Assembly (NCBI RefSeq): GCF_002113885.1
Contig: NW_018480065.1
Coordinates: forward strand, 124,001-188,000
Length of the DNA stretch: 64,000 nt
Source of the DNA: Mizuhopecten yessoensis
Lineage: Eukaryota
Direction of reading: 5' to 3'
In this document: one piece after another, positions 24,820-55,575 of the stretch
Layout of the letters: each line of letters begins with the position of its first letter
Numbering within the stretch: the stretch's first letter is position 1
Notes under the pieces: generated by a model
The model's database searches: none
Seen by the model: the letters and a program-made list of their open reading frames with translations, nothing else
Told to the model about the DNA's origin: nothing
Program-made: the position numbers and the translations under genes

Positions 24820-26005
24820 ACAAGAGATCCCAGAGGGATCTTGGCGCCCACCTTTGTACCATCTTCATTAGTTCTTTGTTAGTTTGATTTTTTCTCTTCT
24901 TTCCTCTAATCTGTTTGATCGAGTCAGTTTAACAGTAAATGCACCTTGAGGTAACTTTTAATCTAAACTTAATACTGATGTGTATGAAAGCCAACCTTCA
25001 AAGTAAGTTTGTCATTTCACATATTTACTAGTACAGTACTTAATGTGAAAGAAATAGAATCGATCATTGCAATATGAGAAAGATCTGTTTAGTTCTTCTT
25101 TTAATCCATTTTGTTTTTATGATCAGTCTCAAAATATAACATACACAACGAGGGATCAAGGGGAACCTACATTTAAAATTTGAGAAAGATCCCTCCCGTA
25201 CTTCCCGAGAAATAGCGATAACAAACTTTCANNNNNNNNNNNNNNNNNNNNNNNNNNNNNNNNNNNNNNNNNNNNNNNNNNNNNNNNNNNNNNNNNNNNN
25301 NNNNNNNNNNNNNNNNNNNNNNNNNNNNNNNNNNNNNNNNNNNNNNNNNNNNNNNNNNNNNNNNNNNNNNNNNNNNNNNNNNNNNNNNNNNNNNNNNNNN
25401 NNNNNNNNNNNNNNNNNNNNNNNNNNNNNNNNNNNNNNNNNNNNNNNNNNNNNNNNNNNNNNNNNNNNNNNNNNNNNNNNNNNNNNNNNNNNNNNNNNNN
25501 NNNNNNNNNNNNNNNNNNNNNNNNNNNNNNNNNNNNNNNNNNNNNNNNNNNNNNNNNNNNNNNNNNNNNNNNNNNNNNNNNNNNNNNNNNNNNNNNNNNN
25601 NNNNNNNNNNNNNNNNNNNNNNNNNNNNNNNNNNNNNNNNNNNNNNNNNNNNNNNNNNNNNNNNNNNNNNNNNNNNNNNNNNNNNNNNNNNNNNNNNNNN
25701 NNNNNNNNNNNNNNNNNNNNNNNNNNNNNNNNNNNNNNNNNNNNNNNNNNNNNNNNNNNNNNNNNNNNNNNNNNNNNNNNNNNNNNNNTGAGAAATAGCG
25801 ATAACAAACTTTCAATATCAAAATCCAAGATGGCTGCCTGTCGGCCATGTTGTTTATCCGATCAGTCTCAAAAGTTGCCCTGCACAGCTTAGGACCAAGG
25901 GGAACCTGTATATAAAATTTGAGAAAGATCCCTCTGGTACTTCTTGAGAAATACCGATAACAAGAATTGTTTATGGACGGACCACGGATGCAGGGTGATT
26001 TGAGT
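24820..26005 (+). mobile_element. Helentron/HINE-like element with internal tandem repeats, spanning the assembly gap
   Basis: acaagag..cccagaggg start; gagaaatagcgataacaaactttca repeated on both sides of the gap; ggacggac microsatellite near the end. Confidence 0.55.
25232..25788. other. Assembly gap (557 N)
   Basis: Run of N with the same repeat unit on both flanks. Confidence 0.99.
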
Positions 26006-41702: not shown

Positions 41703-42060
41703 GTGAAAAGATTCATGTAGCACAACCAATAAGTGTTGTTTTTATGACATTTCAATGACGAGTACGGTTTGTACTCCGTCGCCTTTATTAGACAAATGAA
41801 GCATATATACACAAATGTGTAAAATATGTACGAGTTGTCCATGCAAATTGATGTCGATTCGGCTATGCTGTATGTACAATTAGTAGTTACAGCGTAGCCG
41901 AATCGACATCAATTTGCATGGATAACTTGTACATGTTTTACAACTATGTGTACATACGCTTCACTGAACATTTGTCTGATGTAGGTGACTGAGCACATAC
42001 TGTACTAGTCGTTGAAACATCGCATATAAACCATTGGTTGTGCTACCTGAATCATTTCAC
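41703..42060. mobile_element. Foldback/palindromic element just downstream of FAU
   Basis: About 170-bp imperfect arms; core ccatgcaaattgatgtcgattcggcta / tagccgaatcgacatcaatttgcatgg. Confidence 0.75.
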
Positions 42061-45474: not shown

Positions 45475-45625
45475 AATTCTCCTTAAATCTTGGAATGAGT
45501 ATTTATTGATCACTTATACATGAACAGAACGAACAAAAGCAACAACTTTATGGTCAGTTATTTTTATTCCCTGATGTGTAAAAATATTTAAATAATAAAA
45601 TTATGAAAGATGCTGCTGATTTTTT

Positions 45626-45716
45626 CTGACTAAAACAGATCCATCCGATCACAACCAACGACACTAATCGCTTTTCGTTGTAATCTTCATTAATCTTAAG
45701 GTTGAATAACCAGTCA
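45626..45716 (-). promoter_or_regulatory. Type II SECIS element in the selenoprotein L 3' UTR
   Basis: Minus strand reads agatta-ATGAa-gattacaac-gaAAA-gcgat-tagt-gtcgt-tg-gttgtgatc-gGAt-ggatct: AUGA/GA core, 9-bp helix II, unpaired AAA, apical mini-stem, lower stem tgactgg/ttagtca. Confidence 0.9.
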
Positions 45717-45719
45717 TCT

Positions 45720-48700
45720 TCATTGTGATTTCTTTTCACCCTGAAATACAAAATCTTTAAATATCAGGAGACTGAAAACAAAACATAGATATTTCAGTTT
45801 TGTAGAAATCTTAAAAGCATAAAAATTAAACTTTTTGGGGTAAATCAGTTGCATGTTCTCTGAGGATTCAGTTAACCCAATATAAAATGGCATAATAATG
45901 TATTAATGAAAGCAAAGGATTTCCGATTTCCTCATATGAAAATCAGTTTTTTAGTTTAAACCATATTTTATTCATGTCAATAAACATTGTACATTTACAT
46001 AGACATTTCATTCTTATAATTAGGAAACAAGTACTATTCTACTTATACATAGTCCTTCTCATCATTTCATTTGAAAATTAATGTCTTATTTACCAGCCTC
46101 AATTTTGGATGAAGATTCTTAATTTTTACACTTTAAGGAGAGATTATGTCTTACTTTAAGACCTATATATATATATATATATATATATAAGGACAGGTAA
46201 GAATATTTTCCGAAATATCATGATGCACTGACCTGCAGCACAAAGGATCTAGTGTAACATTTTAATCGCTATCAATTAAGTTCTTTGTTATAAGGTAAAT
46301 CAAATAACATGTACTACCCAAATAATCCCAAGGCCTACAGTAAAGATAATTATTGGATATTAACTTTTTAATATTTTGTGATTTAAAATTTTGCACTCAA
46401 GAACTATTATGAAATTCACAAGGGAAGCAACAGCTGAAGGCAACAAAGGCTGCAGAAAAGACGTATTGTTGGCTGACGGTGCGGAGCAGGCAAGAGGTAA
46501 AACCCCAGATGCCTTCCATTGTTAGGCATTGTGTTAACCTCCATCTGGTGGTTTCTACTGTACACTTGTTAGTTAGAGGGAAATGTTTTACCTTGAGGAC
46601 CTGCAGAAGGAGGTCCACTGAAGGTCTATCCCAGGACTGTTTGCTACAGTACAAAAACTCAACTCGACCCTCCTTGTCCAGTACAAAGTCTCCTCCCATC
46701 TGAAAAAGAAATCTTATCAATTACTTTACAATTTAAACATATGCTATGGTAGGCAATGGTGAAAATAGCTACTGCAGTGTCTCTAAGGGCAACTTTTATT
46801 TTTAAAATTTCTTCCAGAAGATGACTCCTGGTGAACAAACAGTGATTTTATACAGTTAAAATACCTGGTATAGGCTAGAAGGATATAGCAAGATTCTGGT
46901 TTCCCTGAGACCTCGTCCATTTCCCAAGGCTAAGCGGAGGAATTTAGGTCTGGTCGAGGGAAACCAGAAACTTTCTATATCCTTCAAACCCACACTTTTA
47001 GAGTTTTATCATATAGGGAAAAAAGAAAAATATTTTTTAAGAGTCATATTATCAAAAGGATTTCTGAAAACCTATTGAAAGAAAGATGTATGTATATCAC
47101 TATACTCTTTCATCATTGTTTGCAATTTTGTGTCACAAATATAAACCCTTTCACCACATCCAAATCAATGCATGGTAGAGTCTACTAAAGTCACATAGTG
47201 ATGAAATGGTCAAAAACTGGGAGAGGTCAGATCATTATAATGTTCAAGCTTTGCAAAACCTCTCGGCTGATTGGTTTGATAATTTCCGACGAAAAGTTAA
47301 AAAGAATATCCAGGGTGATAGTCTTCTGGGGTGCATATGGCTGATAGAGGACTAACTCCCTGGACAGTGAAGTCGGGGCAAAAGCAAAGATATACCTGTA
47401 GCCAATTTAAGGGGTATTTTTACATAGAGAAAATAAAGTAGATATTTTAAAATGTTATAACTCTAGATCTTCGAACCTGTTGAGTGTCATCATGGACGTT
47501 TTCATATGGTTTAGGAAGAGGTACACCCTGGGCCATTTTCTCAGCATAGAACAGCATTGCGCTCACACTCCACACCTATAACACATATGGTTAACAATTC
47601 AGGAATTCAATCAAGGATTTGCAAATCACCAGCATCGCTAACTAATTAAAATCTGTAAAATCTAAATTTAAGAAGTTCCAATACACTGTGGCAGAGCTGG
47701 GTCTTACACTATCAACTATCAAAATACTATTGCAAGGCCCTTTCCAATCTGTCATTCATTTTGATGGTACATGGTTGCTCCTGTGAGCTACTGGCATCTG
47801 TCTTTGTTGTTGTACGTTAACAATTTAATTTTCAACTTCTACAGAATAACTGAATTGATTGACTTTGAATTTGGTACAAATATTCAATATGATGTCTCAT
47901 CTAAATGTTCTTAATTTTTGTACCAATCCAAAAGATGGCCAACAAGTGAATTCTTCTCAAACTTTACTCCAAATTTGGTACAAATGTTCTTTTATCTGGT
48001 TGCCAACAAGTGTCTTTACTTTTAGAGCTGATCCATTATTCAAGATATCCACTCTGGGCCTGTATTCATGAAACGTTCTCATGCTCAAGTATGGATTCTG
48101 TGCTCAAACCAGCTTTCTTGTAACTCACTTAAATCATGTCAAACAATCAAAAAGTCAATTGTAAACATTGAAAACAGTATTTGGCTTGAAGTTTCTTCGC
48201 ATTAATTTTATTTCCAAATCATTGACAAAATAAGATTTTTTAAATAATTTATGGCCAGAAGAAGAAATTAGACTTGAGCACAAAATCCATGCTTGAGCAT
48301 GAGAATTCATGAATACGGGCCCTGGACTCTGACTGGCTGAGACATTTTTAACTTCTTCCCAAGAATTGCTGCACCAATTGACTCAAAATTTGGTGCAAAT
48401 GTTCTTATTTTGCATGCTGTTCGAAAATTCCAGGATGGCCACTCAGTAGCTCAGACGTTTTCGATTTGAACTCATGAGCACTAAGGTGGCTACAGGTTCT
48501 TGTACTATAAAATGATTCTTGGTAAGTCACTTACATTGATAAAGCAATATAACTCAGATCCCGAAATCCAAAATGCATGTAGCTAGACTTCTCATCAGTC
48601 ATAATAATTAAACACATACATACGTAAGTTTAACTTGTCATATTGGTACAATATTGTTCCTACGTGTTGGTAAATGCTACTTTGTGGTCAAAAACATCAT

Positions 48701-51700
48701 TTTAAACAGATCCAAGATGGCTGCCACAGCTTCTGATTGGCTAAGATCTTTTAAGCTACAACTTGTGTTCTGTTGGTCTGATTGTTTTAATACTTGGTGG
48801 TAAACGTTATGCATGTTGGATAGTCTACTATATATATCCTGTAATAAGGCCAGAGGGCCAACACATGAAATCTCTGAAATACAAAGTAGGAGATTGGTTT
48901 ACAACAGGACAATGAAATGGCATTTGTTTGTCCATTTTCATTTCAACTGAAAAACATTAGATTTGGTTAGTCTTATTATCAGGCATGGGTTAATTGACAG
49001 TTAATAAAGTAAATGGCGTAATTTGAATCACGATATTTACATTATCCAAGATTGCTGTCTTTGCTACTGTTGGCTGAGACCTTTTAGGCTATAACTTCTG
49101 TTCTGTTATTCTGATTTTGTCCATCCTTGGTGGGAAATTGTACTTGTCATTTTCATGTTTTGTTGCTATATAATACTGATCTTAAAATACAACATGATTG
49201 TTGTTGCTTTTGCTTGGTGATCATGGGAGATATTTTATGGTCAGGCACATGGCAGGGCCCTGTTTTACGGCTAGGTTTTTAGTTGAAATTACAAGCTATA
49301 AATAAGTGTATTATGATAAAAAAATCACTACTGTACACATGCACTGGGAAATCTTTGCCCAATCAAACTTCTCTCATCGCCCATGAAATCAATTTACACA
49401 AAGTTGTTTTCTTCTATTTGCTGTTATGATAAATTTGCCTTTATTACTTAGGGGGAAAAAAGGCAAAAGTTCAACTGCAGGGAAAAACACAGAATAAAAT
49501 TTTACAAAAAACAACTACTTACCTTATAAACAGATCGGCTGAGACCAAAGGCAGAATAAATCTGAAAATCAATAGTTTTAGATATGAAAATGTATGTATG
49601 TCAATATCTTCCCATTTGCGAGCAGGGAAAATATACTTCATCCCTAACAACTATACACAAATAACCTTTTATTCAATAATATGCACTGCATGTATACTCA
49701 CAACTTTAGTGCACACATGTAACAGGAGAGGAAAAATTGTCCTATTACAAATTGGTGCCGTTAACCCTCCTCATTCAAGGTAGGAAAACCCTTGGCGGGG
49801 AGTCAAATAACCTGGGTTGGTGTTAGAAAAAAGGGGGAAATAGTGTAAAAGATGTGCATTGATTAGGTTGCCTTACAAGCGTCAGCTGTAGGGAATTTCC
49901 CTTTAGCTTAGCGGTAAAGCATCGGGCTGGAAAGCCAAGGGTCGCAGGTTTGATCCCCAGCGACGGCACTATCTTTATCACTACTCCCTGTCCTACTACA
50001 AATTTCTCCATCCCAGACAAGCCCCAAGTTGGGCGCCAAACGTAACAGGAGAGGAAAAATGCACGGCCAGACTAGGGTTTGAACCCGGGACCCTCCAAAC
50101 TCTAGACGGTCAAGATGGATGCTTTACCAATTCAGCTATACAAATGTATACTGCATATGTATATATAAAACTTCCTGCCAACATACCATGAGAATAGTAG
50201 CATCATGCTACAGCTTTCTGAGGTTCTGAAAAAAGACTCAAATAACCTTGAAAGTATTGGTGTAGGCCTTTGTAAAATGAATGTTGATCTTTATCTAAGG
50301 GGACATAATTTCAGAATTATCAGTACAGTATGCATGTACACAATATTACTAAGCGACAAAATCCTTTGGTGTATCTTACCTTTCGATCAGTATCCAACAG
50401 CATGGGATATTGACACTTTGTTTCCTTCAACCACTGGAGAGCTCCCTCCCGTATTCCAAATGAGATTAAGACAATTTTACTGTTCTGTGCAAAAATGTCC
50501 TTCTGAAACAGAGAGGATATAACAAGTAGTGATACACTTAAAATAAATGAAAAGGTTATATAGCACAACCAGTGAAGCTGATATTGTGTGATGTTTCGAT
50601 GACTAATATGATACATACTCTGTCACCTTTATCATTTTGCAATAATAATTGTTTGTATTTATACCAAACACCCATACATTAGCAATGTACTCTCTGTATA
50701 AATGTACTTTATATTGGACATTATATGAATTGTAAACCAAAACAAATGCTAATTCTGAACAAATGAAATATTTCATTGGTGAAGCAATAATAAAACCTGC
50801 TAAAATATTTAATGAAATAAAAAAGAAACTACTGTTCTAGTCCTACAACTACCTCAGCTTTTTCCAGGAGGGTGATATGCTCTCGTCATGGAAGTCAGGC
50901 AAAATGTCGCAGCAGTATGAGGGTAAGGTGGTCACTTGTCAGATACTGGGATAAGGTAGTAGTGTCCCCTGTCCTTGCATCTTCCAAGATCACATTAATA
51001 GGTCCCTCCTGTCCCTCGGACAGGGTGCTGACCCCTCCCTCCTGTAGCTGCTGATCAAGGTCCTGGAGAAGCTGGTCCCACTCAACCTACAAACAAGGGA
51101 ATAGCACTATTTACAGCTTTTATGTTTCAGCAAGCATATCTAGGTAACTGTTTATCAGTACAGCAAAGGCTAATGATGGGCACTCGGTTGAAAAATCATA
51201 ATCAATTATCGGTTTGTATTAATCGGAAGTAGTAAACCGATTGCATGATTGCTTTATAATGTTATGGGGACTGAAAGTGAATACCCAAATAAAGTGAGAA
51301 TCCTGCTGTTACATCAATAGACAAAGTTGTAAACTATACATTAGGCTTCTATTTTCATTTACAATGAATGGAGTTCAAGCAACTTTCGTGCAGTTTTGTC
51401 AAGCCTATAGTAATTAAAATTGATAAGAAGAAATGACTTTAAATGCGAACCTTTTATTGTATACATTTGAAACTTTGATTTCAATAATGAACCAATTATA
51501 TCGGTTCATTATAATTCATAAATCAGAAAGGGCTAACTGATTGAGATCAATTATATCATTGTTCATCAGCCCATCACTAGTAAAGACTCAATATAAGGTC
51601 CCTTGTGTCATGTCCAATAAACCGTTTTTCCTTTTTTTAGCTGAATAATTCCTTCATAATTTATGTCTCCAATGATATATATCACCACACTGCTTATACA

Positions 51701-54700
51701 TGTAATACCAAAATTTCGCTAGACAAATATTTATACAATGTATAAAAAAAACCCATGTCTTTTGTACATGTAATAAGAAATAACACACTAAATGTACATG
51801 TACAGCTAAGTAACCAGAACCTAAATAAATTTAGAAAAGTAACTTTGAATATTTTGTGGTAAAAGTCTACAGAAATGTGAGTGAGTTAGGAGAGAAGATC
51901 ACAGCATTAAGGAACAATATACAACTGGTACATTGGTTGCTGGCAAAGGAATCAGATCATCTGCATCGATTTTAGGAATGGATTGAAAATGATTCATATA
52001 CAATGTAATAGAACCAGAGTTTAAACAATGGCACTTTCAAATGGATTAATACTGTAAATCACCTGATCCTTGCAAATACCTATTTCACAAATATATTCGA
52101 AACGACTACAGACCTTGATTTAGGATTTTTGAAACATTGTATTTTTTTCATTTAGAAACTAAAATATCTAAGAAGGTCCCAAATAAAACTTAAATGTTGT
52201 ATCATTAAAACTTCCGATTGTCAAATCAATGTAAATGTGCATAAATGAATGTAAGGTTTCATCAGTATTACCTCTGTGTCGTTGATACTTTGTTCCAGGT
52301 CCTGGATATCATGGTGTCTAGTGGGAAAGAAATTCATATACAGACATATAATTGATTGGTTTTACATTGATATAATCAATCCACTAACACTTCATTCCTC
52401 ATGATTTTGGGAAATATATTTGATTAACACACTTTACATGTATAGTATCTAGTAACAGACTATTTCACTTTAAATGTAAGACTGTTATATTGATGGTAAA
52501 TCCCACAATGAACAAGTCATAATGATGGATGTCACAATTCTAAATGACTTTGAATAGATTAATTTGCGATGACATTCTTCTTCTCCCGATAACTGCGACA
52601 GAACTCATAAGTATGAGTGCAACTGTCACATTGACAATTGTATTTTGGACATGCAGACTAATATTTTGAAATTAGAGTGGAAAATATATAAAACCGGTTT
52701 GTCAGCCATTTTTAATCAGTTGCACTTCATAAACCTTAACTTTTGAATATATAACACTCACCTGAAGTTTTTTTTCACGACTTTATCAAAATCTTTCTTG
52801 TTTGTAACTTTCAATCTGAAAAGAAACAGAACTATATATTGTGCCTTTTCAAAACAAAAACAAAAGCACACATATACACATATATATAACACATTCACCC
52901 TTGAAGACACATCTCAAAGGTTGGAATACTGTTTATTATGAAATTTTAGGGGTGAATGAGATAATGATCAATCAAGTGAGAAAGCAAGTATGGTGATAAC
53001 TGATCGATCATTGCCATAATGACATATAGCGATAAATAAAACATAATCTAGTTAATTAAATAAATCCAGTTAATTAAATAAATAAAACATAATCTAGTTA
53101 ATTATTTGATGGTTGTTACAGGAAGGTGGTCTTCATTGACAGTTGGTCTTCATAGACAGGTGGTCTTCATAGACAGGTGGTCTTCATAGACAGTTGGTCT
53201 TCAAAGTTCAGTGTACACTGTATTTTCCCAACAGGTTAGGATACTGATTTCAGTATCTAGGTTCGATAAAAGACATTCCATTTTTCCAGTGATTTTTTTA
53301 ATTTGAATTTGTATGATCACATTTTTTCTCAAAGTGAAGATATGATATACCTGGTACATTATTTGACTTTTTGAAAAACCATGAAGCATAGTCATTTGAT
53401 AAATTTACATGTGCTTTTCAAATCCCAGGGGTTTTGAAAAACAATCTCTTTGATGAAATTGGCAAAGAAATTATTGCCATAATAGCAAATTGGAAAAATT
53501 TGGATAATAATTATGACCACTACATGAAATAAGACACTTTTCTTTTACACTTACCGGCCTGCTGTACATGTAACCACAGGGAATTGACACGTTACTATGA
53601 CCCAAACTTCGCGAGCCAAGGGTGTTCAATACGATACTCTCCTATGAATAGGAGAGTATCGTATTGAACACCCTTGGCTCACGAAGTTGCTATGACCCAG
53701 AATGAAAAATAATACCCCATGGTCCGACCCCCAGATGACTTGATCTGGGGGTCGGACCATGGGTAATTGTTTTTTTCATTTTGATTTTGGGTCAAAGGAA
53801 CGTTTCAAGTCCCTGTGCATGTAACCCACTATGTTGAAACTCAGTTCACTTGTAGGAATTTATTAAATCTTGTATTAAGTTCTTTAGTTTTTTATTTTTT
53901 ATTTAAAAAAGAAATGTTCTGATATCCCCTGACATCTCATTAGTACATGTACAAGGAACATTAAAGAACTTTTTTTGTGTAATATGATATCACTGACATT
54001 ATCTTCATTCCATATAAGGAGGTATCTATGGATTACATTATAAGTTAATGACAAAAGGAAATTAAGTATGTGATAACTGATGCCTATATAGAGATACCTT
54101 TCAAATGCATTCCTGTAAGTTGAAGCAAGTCCAAACAATTTGCTGATTTTTCCATTTACAAAGTCATTGACACCATTGGTTTCTGTAAATTAAAAGTATT
54201 TTTTAACATTATAAATAGGTATATGAATGCAACCAAGATAATATCAATGTTATGTATTTCTTTTTAAAATGAGAACATGTATTGTGATATATTGATATTG
54301 TAATACATATATGTATGTATATTGCTATATTTTGTGATAAAACGAGATTTATTTGAAAATACTGTCAATTATTTAAATAAGTGCCTAGCACCTATGTAAT
54401 TTGCGCAGGCATTTTTTGAGTAATTCAAGTTCCGAAAATCGAACTCAGATAATGAAAAACAAACCGCTTTGGATTCTTAGGATTTTTGTAATTTGTTTAT
54501 TATAAGTAAGTTCATAAGTATTGTTTACAGGTACAATGATGTTAAAACTAAGAAGAAACTGCCTACATGTAATAAACTACATTTGCTGTGTTGATTTTGT
54601 TTGTCCACACATGTATTCAGTTGTATATTCATATAGATGATGACTAATAATTTGTTGATCTGGTCGAGTTGTGAACAATCTGACCTTCCAATTGCATCAA

Positions 54701-55575
54701 TAGCTAGAGTTTGATTCCCAACATTGTTTTAACATGAAAAATTCATATAAAATAGTTTTTCTCCTGCCCACACAACTCCAACAACCCACTGGCAGTGTAT
54801 AAAATGGTCTGGGATGGGTGTGACCGTGTCTGTGCTGTATCATTCAAAAGAGGTTGCATTATGAAAAAGATACTTTTAGTGTTGGAAGCATGGTCCTACC
54901 CCCAAAACAGAACACTACTACATCTCCAGCATACATGAAGGAATGCATATATGTGGGAATAGTTAGCAAGATGGCATAAGACTTGTAGTTGGTGCCTGAT
55001 AAGGCAGCTCCTACGAAAATCTTCAGAATGTATATTTATGTATTGTAAGCCCCTCCGAGTGGCTTATTCTAGCTCGAAAGGGATCTTTATCAGATGCCAT
55101 ATGTTCACCTGGACATCTAATAAATAGCCCCATCTAGCTGGAATAAGCCTTATCAGGCACTAACTACTAGTCTTATGCCAGTGTAATTTTAAGTATGGCT
55201 GCTTGTTGACCATTTACCGGGTAATAATGACTGCATGATAATATCCTTGTTGGAATTCTATCCATTTTCAAGGTGGTTTCTTTTTTCAAATTTAAGATAA
55301 ATGAAAGTAAGCAATTCAACAAACATTTAATAGCTGCTGATTGGAATATCAAGATTTAAAATTGGTAATGCAAAAAAATATCAATTCAATTTACTTCCAA
55401 GTATTCAATTGACTATCAAGTACTGCATTATATCTTTACTACAGCCGTAGACCTGAAATGAAATCATACCTTTAACAACATTCCGGGAAAATTTTAGAAT
55501 ATCTTCCTCTCTGTCTAAAATGTTTTTCAGGCTATGTCGCAGGTCCGACAATACTTCAGCCTCCTCCGTTGTCAT
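45720..55575 (-). CDS. SELENOL: Selenoprotein L (thioredoxin/AhpC-TSA-like fold, UxxU motif, two Sec); 10 coding exons, 304 aa
   Basis: Exons 55575-55470, 54182-54098, 52815-52762, 52317-52272, 51086-50853, 50502-50380, 49561-49523, 47575-47477, 46699-46592, 45740-45720. LILLRHFA-U-LP-U-REH with TGA at 50897-50895 and 50888-50886; downstream QMGGDFVLD..DRPSV. SECIS present. Probable 5' UTR exon ends at 57521. Confidence 0.94.
48057..48321. mobile_element. Harbinger-like MITE with 3-bp CTG TSD, inserted in an older repeat
   Basis: TIR ggcctgtattcatgaa..ctcatgctcaag / cttgagcatgagaattcatgaatacgggcc; ctg at 48054-48056 and 48322-48324. Partial relative near 63530. Confidence 0.75.
49718..50138. 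mobile_element. Two interleaved TRIM-like LTR elements with tRNA-like LTRs, in opposite orientation
   Basis: Plus element: LTR end tgtcctattaca 49738-49749, PBS tggtgccgt, purine tract agaaaaaagggggaa, LTR 49844-50000 (TGT..ACA) with A/B boxes. Minus element: LTR 50138-50041, PBS tggcgcccaacttggggc 50038-50021, LTR end repeated at 49737-49718. Confidence 0.7.
53125..53203. repeat. 17-bp tandem repeat, 4-5 copies
   Basis: ggtggtcttcatagaca units. Confidence 0.8.
53575..53817. mobile_element. Palindromic MITE (8-bp TSD) containing a nested 86-bp hairpin element (9-bp TSD)
   Basis: Outer: cacaggg..ccctgtg with TSD catgtaac (53567-53574, 53818-53825). Inner: 53604-53689 with TSD ctatgaccc (53595-53603, 53690-53698). 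Confidence 0.88.
54972..55180. mobile_element. MITE
   Basis: TIR tggcataagacttgtagttggtgcctgataaggc / gccttatcaggcactaactactagtcttatgcca. Confidence 0.7.

What the first reader, a model, noticed from the sequence alone, without database searches (positions are those of the whole stretch)
45626..55575. Hidden double-selenocysteine (UxxU) selenoprotein L with its own SECIS
Seen: exon 51086-50853 has two in-frame TGA codons three codons apart (RHFA-TGA-LP-TGA-REH), at the position of a thioredoxin CxxC motif. The frame stays open through five more exons and a well-formed type II SECIS follows the stop. Known: SelL is a rare selenoprotein of aquatic organisms whose UxxU motif forms an intramolecular diselenide, and its substrate is unknown. 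Inference: one SECIS must recode both UGAs. ORF finders truncate or split this gene, as the supplied track does.
Basis: partly seen in the sequence, partly recalled or inferred. Interest (0 to 1): 0.82.

Follow-up and report, generated by a model that had tools for sequence, protein, structure and literature searches.

The report
Scallop selenoprotein L gene, two Sec codons
This is a real but ordinary gene: the scallop copy of selenoprotein L, a redox protein with two selenocysteines (U-L-P-U) read from two UGA "stop" codons with the help of one RNA hairpin after the gene, which gene finders routinely cut short.

Summary
On the minus strand, exon 51086-50853 reads ...LLRHFA-TGA-LP-TGA-REH... 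in frame.

I rebuilt a 10-exon gene with all nine introns GT-AG. It has 915 nt and encodes 304 aa, with Sec161 and Sec164.

An exhaustive protein search with the 63 aa before the first TGA found 30 proteins. Nearly all end exactly at ...LLRHFA, meaning they are predictions cut at the same codon. They come from bivalves, gastropods, a sea cucumber and an acorn worm, and two sea-slug records are named "selenoprotein L".

Seven spliced transcripts from other species all keep RHFA-TGA-LP-TGA-R in frame, followed by an AhpC-TSA_2 domain.

The only SECIS_1 match in the 64 kb lies on the right strand, 29 nt after the stop. It scores 31.2 bits, just under Rfam's cut-off of 35, but it has the canonical AUGA / AAA / GA features. 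It also shows two compensatory changes against the closest transcript.

A structure model puts the motif at the CxxC position of the Prx-like fold.

The family, the motif and the single-SECIS mechanism have been known since 2007, so this is a correct annotation fix and not a discovery.

The parts
55470..55575 (-). Coding exon 1 (ATG at 55575; 106 nt, ends in phase 1)
   Evidence: An in-frame stop lies 15 nt upstream. tblastn with P0001 residues 2-34 gives 70% identity. GT donor.
54098..54182 (-). Coding exon 2 (85 nt)
   Evidence: tblastn with P0001 residues 35-63 gives 83% identity. blastn to transcript L006. AG/GT splice sites.
52762..52815 (-). Coding exon 3 (54 nt; LKVTNKKDFDKVVKKNF)
   Evidence: Read from the sequence. 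It matches P0001 LNVKTKKEFDQVVKKRF. AG/GT splice sites and the frame fit. It is too short for a blastn hit.
52272..52317 (-). Coding exon 4 (46 nt; HHDIQDLEQSINDTE)
   Evidence: tblastn with P0001 residues 81-97 gives 82% identity. blastn to L006. AG/GT splice sites.
50853..51086 (-). Coding exon 5 (234 nt), carrying the RHFA-U-LP-U-REH redox motif
   Evidence: tblastn with P0001 residues 97-159 gives 78% identity, E 2e-20. blastn to L006 gives 192 bits.
50895..50897 (-). TGA, Sec161
   Evidence: In frame. TGA stands at the same position in 7 transcripts and in the B. pfeifferi genome.
50886..50888 (-). TGA, Sec164
   Evidence: Same evidence as for Sec161.
50380..50502 (-). Coding exon 6 (123 nt)
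   Evidence: Weak Pfam AhpC-TSA_2 match on this exon alone. tblastn with Elysia SelL P0033, E 2e-7. blastn to L006 at 85%.
49523..49561 (-). Coding exon 7 (39 nt; IYSAFGLSRSVYK)
   Evidence: It matches IYQAFGLNRSVSK of P0033. blastn to L006 at 90%.
47477..47575 (-). Coding exon 8 (99 nt)
   Evidence: tblastn with P0033 at 62% identity, E 6e-10. blastn to L006 at 87%.
46592..46699 (-). Coding exon 9 (108 nt; MGGDF...LLQVLK)
   Evidence: tblastn with P0033 at 59% identity, E 9e-9. AG/GT splice sites after I corrected my first coordinates.
45720..45740 (-). Coding exon 10 start (GEKKSQ) plus the stop codon TGA at 45722-45720; the exon continues into the 3'UTR
   Evidence: The acceptor was chosen by homology. 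The stop TGA of L006 (996-998) aligns to 45722-45720. The rival acceptor at 45775 (SPDI*) has no support.
45631..45698 (-). Type II SECIS element (AUGA at 45690-45687, AAAA bulge, mini-stem, GA at 45644-45643)
   Evidence: Rfam SECIS_1 at 31.2 bits (cut-off 35), E 0.007 in 13 kb. It is the only SECIS match in the 64 kb. The minimum-free-energy fold gives the same helices. There are 2 compensatory and 2 one-sided changes against L006.
45563..45568 (-). AATAAA, a likely polyadenylation signal
   Evidence: Read from the sequence only. Not tested.

Best explanation
This locus is the single-copy scallop orthologue of selenoprotein L (SELENOL).

Gene and protein: 10 coding exons spread over about 10 kb on the minus strand give a 304-residue protein. 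It has an N-terminal helical bundle of about 115 residues, followed by a peroxiredoxin-like-2 thioredoxin fold.

Active site: the motif is Sec161-Leu-Pro-Sec164. It sits at the end of the third beta-strand and the first turn of the following helix, which is the classical CxxC position.

Recoding (inferred): both UGAs lie 461 and 452 nt upstream of the SECIS core. They are read as selenocysteine through the one type II SECIS in the very short 3'UTR.

Termination (inferred): the terminator is a third UGA only 29 nt before the SECIS core. It most likely stays a stop because it is too close to the SECIS.

Chemistry (by analogy with fish SelL, from the literature): the two selenols cycle between a reduced state and an intramolecular diselenide in a redox reaction whose substrate is unknown.

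Shown here: gene structure, conservation of both TGAs, fold, SECIS features, and the presence of tRNA-Sec in the genome. Inferred: actual Sec insertion, the diselenide, and the reason the third UGA terminates.
For: Sequence and gene model:
- Two in-frame TGAs in exon 5.
- A 10-exon GT-AG model with no other stops.

Orthologues:
- 30 proteins were found with the 63 aa upstream of the first TGA, and nearly all end at ...LLRHFA.
- P0002, evidently translated with TGA read as W, reads FAWLPWRQH.
- The named relatives are 'selenoprotein l' of Plakobranchus and 'selenoprotein L' of Elysia. Truncated 'hypothetical' proteins come from Solemya, Potamilus, Mactra, Patella, Pomacea, Apostichopus and Saccoglossus.
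- Elysia SelL aligns in order (collinearly) with exons 2 and 5-9.

Transcripts and a second genome:
- Seven spliced transcripts (L006, L008, L010-L014) all carry LLRHFA-TGA-LP-TGA-R in frame. Total lengths are 292-334 aa.
- The part after the motif scores 54-59 bits on AhpC-TSA_2 against a cut-off of 27.
- The Biomphalaria pfeifferi genome has TGA at both sites.

SECIS:
- Rfam matches.
- Orthologous SECIS matches follow the stop in L006/L007 (29.7 bits), L014 (30.3), L008/L009 (24.2) and L012 (20.9).
- My own pattern scan found one in L013.
- Compensatory changes against L006.

Structure:
- The AF2 model of the snail orthologue has pLDDT 89.9, with the motif at the N-end of helix 164-175 after strand 152-157.
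- The best PDB match is human prostamide/PGF synthase (C44S/C47S mutant), TM 0.83. The phmmer offset maps residue 163 to 44 and 166 to 47, and the ResA CEPC motif aligns to the motif.

Genome context:
- Only one locus in the genome matches.
- tRNA-Sec is present at 77 bits with anticodon TCA.

Literature:
- SelL has two Sec residues two positions apart, inserted with a single SECIS (PMC3316567).
- It forms a diselenide and occurs in fish, invertebrates and marine bacteria (PMC2397514).
Against: - The SECIS score (31.2) is below Rfam's gathering score (35).
- No SECIS was detected in 2 of the 7 foreign transcripts (L010, L011).
- The last splice (E9 to E10) rests only on homology with one related transcript.
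- No fish SelL sequence was retrieved, so the family name rests on database names of sea-slug orthologues plus the defining motif and fold.
- The one apparent Cys form (P0058, CLPC) is not trustworthy, because its congener has TGA at both sites.
Confidence: 0.93

Rival explanations
1. The UGAs are ordinary stops. The gene would then make only the 160-residue N-terminal helical protein, and the downstream exons would be untranslated or a decaying remnant.
For: Public annotations in many species stop exactly at the first TGA. The SECIS is below Rfam's cut-off.
Against: The 140 codons after the second TGA stay open, in frame and conserved from scallop to snail, at 53-67% identity per exon. They form a scoring AhpC-TSA_2 domain in every transcript. 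The truncated product would end in the middle of a thioredoxin fold. A SECIS follows the stop in most orthologues.
Confidence: 0.03
2. The mature mRNA skips the TGA-bearing part of exon 5, as the database models of Elysia and Biomphalaria do. That would give a selenium-free isoform.
For: P0033, P0057 and P0059 are modelled this way.
Against: All seven assembled transcripts keep both TGAs. The skipped models remove strand 3 and the active-site turn. Skipping the Sec codon is a documented annotation artefact class (PMC12822975). In the B. pfeifferi DNA the skipped segment is intact, with TGA at both sites.
Confidence: 0.03
3. Recoding is only partial. A sizeable share of ribosomes would stop at UGA161 or UGA164, so the locus yields both a truncated helical protein and full-length SelL.
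For: Sec insertion is generally inefficient, and two adjacent UGAs compound this (general knowledge, not tested here).
Against: Nothing here speaks against it. It is compatible with the main explanation rather than a replacement for it.
Confidence: 0.3

Closest known systems
Selenoprotein L (SelL/SELENOL) of fish and aquatic invertebrates (Shchedrina et al. 2007, PNAS 104:13919; cited in PMC2397514, PMC3316567, PMC13134290)
   Same: It has two Sec residues two positions apart in a Prx-like redox motif, a single SECIS and an aquatic host. Database orthologues carry this name.
   Different: Nothing essential differs. This is a bivalve copy. A 2012 survey did not find SelL in the mollusc Lottia (PMC3473315). 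I did not obtain a fish sequence for a direct alignment.
Peroxiredoxin-like 2C (PRXL2C/AAED1), the name NCBI gives the Biomphalaria orthologues
   Same: Same AhpC-TSA_2 fold and the same RHF-x-C/U-x-x-C/U-R motif region (the motif of human PRXL2C is from my memory only).
   Different: Vertebrate PRXL2C uses Cys. From memory it lacks the long N-terminal helical domain; I did not test this here.
Prostamide/prostaglandin F synthase (PRXL2B), PDB 9usa/9us9
   Same: It is the best structural match to the C-terminal domain (TM 0.83, rmsd 2.7). Its C44-x-x-C47 falls on the two Sec positions.
   Different: About 20% identity, Cys instead of Sec, no N-terminal bundle, and a known substrate that need not apply here.
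Selenoprotein U / PRXL2A
   Same: Same Pfam family. The scallop genome has other AhpC-TSA_2 loci with an in-frame TGA (L001).
   Different: It has a single Sec, and those are different loci.

Membership tests
Selenoprotein L (SELENOL) | Two in-frame UGA codons separated by two codons (UxxU) | tested here: met
   TGA at 50897-50895 and at 50888-50886. The same is seen in 7 transcripts and in one snail genome.
Selenoprotein L (SELENOL) | The motif lies at the CxxC position of a peroxiredoxin-like / thioredoxin fold | tested here: met
   AhpC-TSA_2 scores 54-59 bits on the part after the motif. The AF2 model has strand, then motif, then helix. PGFS C44/C47 and the ResA CEPC motif align to it. The model was built on a snail orthologue, not on the scallop protein.
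Selenoprotein L (SELENOL) | Sequence homology to proteins already called SelL | tested here: met
   P0004 'selenoprotein l' of Plakobranchus, E 4e-9 to exon 5 alone. P0033 'selenoprotein L' of Elysia aligns in order with exons 2 and 5-9. Those names are database annotations, and no fish SelL was compared.
Selenoprotein L (SELENOL) | A eukaryotic SECIS in the 3'UTR, and only one | tested here: inconclusive
   SECIS_1 scores 31.2 bits against a cut-off of 35, and it is the only match in 64 kb. The canonical AUGA/AAA/GA features and a type II mini-stem are present, with compensatory changes. SECISearch3 was not available.
Selenoprotein L (SELENOL) | Both UGAs present in the mature mRNA | tested here: inconclusive
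   Met in seven other species' transcripts.
Selenoprotein L (SELENOL) | Sec is actually inserted and forms an intramolecular diselenide | not testable with these tools
   This needs 75Se labelling or mass spectrometry. Only the decoding capacity (tRNA-Sec) was shown.

The most novel reading that the evidence does not exclude
SelL is a two-domain protein. Its first ~115 residues form a confidently predicted helical bundle (pLDDT 93.5) that is conserved from acorn worm to molluscs. This domain has no Pfam family, no significant PDB fold match and no ESM Atlas neighbour. If it is the partner- or substrate-binding module, it would give a handle on SelL's still unknown function. Separately, in the scallops the terminator is a UGA-x-UGA pair 29 and 23 nt before the SECIS core. 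That would make a natural test case for how distance to a SECIS decides between stop and Sec.
Probability: 0.3. Interest if true: 0.4.

Novelty: new member of a known kind. Interest (0 to 1): 0.2.

Why it matters
The main value is annotation. The scallop gene, like almost every molluscan, echinoderm and hemichordate copy I retrieved, appears in databases as a fragment that stops at the first UGA or skips the active site. Selenoproteome counts for these animals are therefore too low. The locus gives a clean 10-exon model and a compact SECIS for curating bivalve SelL. It adds nothing new about how SelL works.

Tried and rejected
No reads were laid, and I did not try another route.
- Word-index search: the 63-aa piece found nothing because of the tool's length window. 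That justified the exhaustive search.
- PDB by sequence: the exon-5 piece gave only noise.
- Pfam on single exons: nearly blind, with only exon 6 giving 17 bits. In that call my exon-9 coordinates (46591-46701) were out of frame, so that row is void. The coordinates were corrected.
- Apparent Cys orthologue: P0058 (B. glabrata, CLPC) first looked like one. I withdrew this after finding TGA at both sites in the B. pfeifferi genome. The C letters may stand for U.
- Alignments: MAFFT alignments of split fragments were poor. A4 was unusable, and in A3 the last 11 residues of the fragments are misplaced.
- SECIS across distant species: the MAFFT alignment was not usable. A covariance model built from two scallop-like sequences was too narrow. 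My relaxed pattern scan found nothing in L010-L012 or L014.
- N-terminal domain: no Atlas neighbour and no PDB match below E 0.2.
- Papers not held: the 2007 SelL paper and the 2019 mollusc selenoprotein P paper.
- Rival gene ends rejected: read-through of the exon-9 donor into a 68-codon tail, and the acceptor at 45775 (SPDI*). The related transcript supports neither.
- Joined model: the joined spliced model was never sent to a search tool. Exons were searched by reference. A script joined them only to check frame, splice sites and distances.
Full report
**What is in the sequence**

On the minus strand, the stretch 51086-50853 is bounded by ...tttgtag| and |gtagtt. It reads VEWDQ...LTLILLRHFA-TGA-LP-TGA-REHITLLEKAE. 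The other two frames are closed. The two TGAs are at 50897-50895 and 50888-50886.

**Gene model**

I placed the downstream exons by reading splice sites. I then checked them against relatives.

A spliced transcript of a close relative (L006, Logan run SRR19746220) aligns to the window in nine ordered blocks. The N-terminal fragment P0001 places exons 1, 2, 4 and 5. The Elysia protein places exons 2 and 5-9.

The final model has 10 coding exons:
- 55575-55470
- 54182-54098
- 52815-52762
- 52317-52272
- 51086-50853
- 50502-50380
- 49561-49523
- 47575-47477
- 46699-46592
- 45740-45720

All nine introns are GT-AG. The coding sequence is 915 nt, giving 304 residues. The only in-frame stops are TGA at codons 161, 164 and 305.

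My first coordinates for exon 9 were off by two bases and were corrected in that call. The last splice rests on homology only: the stop TGA of L006 aligns to 45722-45720.

The joined model was used only inside a script, to check frame and distances.

**Relatives**

Family scans of single exons and the word-index search left the protein open, so I spent the exhaustive search on the 63 residues before the first TGA. It returned 30 proteins. Nearly all end exactly with ...LLRHFA, meaning they are gene predictions that stop at the same codon.

One of them, evidently translated with TGA read as W, reads RHFA-W-LP-W-RQH.

The named members are:
- "selenoprotein l" of the sea slug Plakobranchus;
- hypothetical proteins of Solemya, Potamilus, Mactra, Patella and Pomacea;
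- a sea cucumber and an acorn worm protein.

A further search found "selenoprotein L" of Elysia and "peroxiredoxin-like 2C" of Biomphalaria. In both, the active-site segment is skipped. "Stops at Sec" and "skips Sec" are exactly the misannotation classes described for vertebrate selenoproteins in PMC12822975.

**Are the TGAs in mature mRNA, and are they conserved?**

Seven assembled transcripts from different species each hold, in one frame:
- an N-terminal part;
- LLRHFA-TGA-LP-TGA-R;
- about 135-140 further codons;
- a stop.

Total lengths are 292-334 residues. The part after the motif scores 54-59 bits on AhpC-TSA_2 against a cut-off of 27.

The genome of Biomphalaria pfeifferi also has TGA at both sites. 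This made me withdraw an apparent Cys form. The UniRef protein of B. glabrata shows C-L-P-C, and tblastn aligned those Cs to the scallop TGAs. With TGA in the congener, I do not trust those letters.

**SECIS**

Rfam's SECIS_1 model matches 45698-45631 on the minus strand at 31.2 bits. That is below the gathering score of 35. The E-value is 0.007 for the 13-kb search and 0.034 for the whole window, where it is the only SECIS match on either strand.

The element has:
- AUGA at 45690-45687;
- a 9-bp helix II;
- an AAAA bulge 11 nt after the core;
- a 5-bp mini-stem, which makes it type II;
- GA on the 3' side.

The minimum-free-energy fold gives the same helices.

The orthologous element of L006 scores 29.7 bits. 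It differs by two double compensatory changes (A-U to G-C, and C-G to U-A) and two one-sided changes. With only two sequences this is consistent with the structure but not statistically strong.

SECIS matches also follow the stop in L008/L009, L012 and L014. My pattern scan found one in L013. None was found in L010 or L011.

In the mRNA model the two Sec codons lie 461 and 452 nt before the AUGA, and the terminator lies only 29 nt before it. An AATAAA at 45568-45563 suggests a 3'UTR of about 160 nt, with room for one SECIS only.

**Fold**

I modelled the snail orthologue with an alignment of the fragments. The model has pLDDT 89.9 and pTM 0.83. It shows four long helices at residues 10-112, then a thioredoxin fold.

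The motif (residues 163-166) follows strand 152-157 and opens helix 164-175. The best PDB match is human prostamide/prostaglandin F synthase, crystallised as the C44S/C47S mutant (TM 0.83). The sequence alignment offset puts residues 163 and 166 on positions 44 and 47. The CEPC motif of ResA aligns to the motif directly, although those sequence E-values are weak at 0.04-0.08.

The N-terminal bundle alone models at pLDDT 93.5. It has no Pfam family, no Atlas neighbour and no PDB match better than E 0.2.

**Genome context**

The assembly has 987,588,634 bases in 82,659 contigs. From memory, that size fits the Yesso scallop assembly.

Only this locus matches the snail protein in the whole genome. 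A tRNA-Sec gene is present at 77 bits with anticodon TCA.

The N run at 25232-25788 was left alone.

**What is known, and verdict**

SelL is described as a Prx-like selenoprotein with two Sec residues two positions apart. They form a diselenide and are inserted with a single SECIS. It is found in fish, invertebrates and marine bacteria and was lost in tetrapods (PMC2397514, PMC3316567, PMC13134290, PMC2398784). A 2012 survey found it in a sponge, a placozoan, a sea anemone, an annelid and amphioxus, but not in the limpet Lottia. My hits show it is in fact widespread in molluscs, including the limpet Patella.

The finding is a sound annotation of a known family in one more animal, not a new kind of thing.

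Noticed in passing
window 45720-45714 and L006:996-1004: The terminator is TGA-AGA-TGA in the scallop and TGA-AAA-TGA in the related transcript. These are two more UGAs, 29 and 23 nt before the SECIS core. In 5 of 7 foreign transcripts the stop is also UGA, and where a SECIS was found it starts 10-60 nt after the stop.
   Followed up: partly
L015:7286-7297 (Biomphalaria pfeifferi) versus P0058 residues 163-166: The UniRef protein of B. glabrata shows Cys-Leu-Pro-Cys where the congener's genome has TGA-CTx-CCx-TGA. The C letters may be U written as C, or B. glabrata may truly have a Cys form. NCBI's models of both snails skip the segment.
   Followed up: partly
P0001 residues 1-114, which correspond to window exons 1-4 and the start of exon 5: An N-terminal helical bundle (pLDDT 93.5) is conserved in all SelL orthologues retrieved. 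It has no Pfam, PDB or Atlas relative.
   Followed up: partly
window 53610-53683 and 53698-53779 (intron 2): Two near-perfect long hairpins match miRNA-precursor models on both strands, far below their cut-offs. They are probably inverted-repeat transposon remnants. A similar hairpin lies at 46871-46992 (intron 8), and another at 41833-41928.
   Followed up: no
   Followed up: no
G000:C5561:333843-334022 (L001) and G000:C5167:782046-782135 (L004): Other AhpC-TSA_2 exon matches in this genome carry one in-frame TGA each. They may be SelU-type selenoprotein genes.
   Followed up: no
P0020 (EukProt, Siedleckia nematoides transcriptome): A SelL N-terminal fragment is filed under an apicomplexan parasite of polychaetes. 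Host contamination seems more likely than a protist SelL.
   Followed up: no
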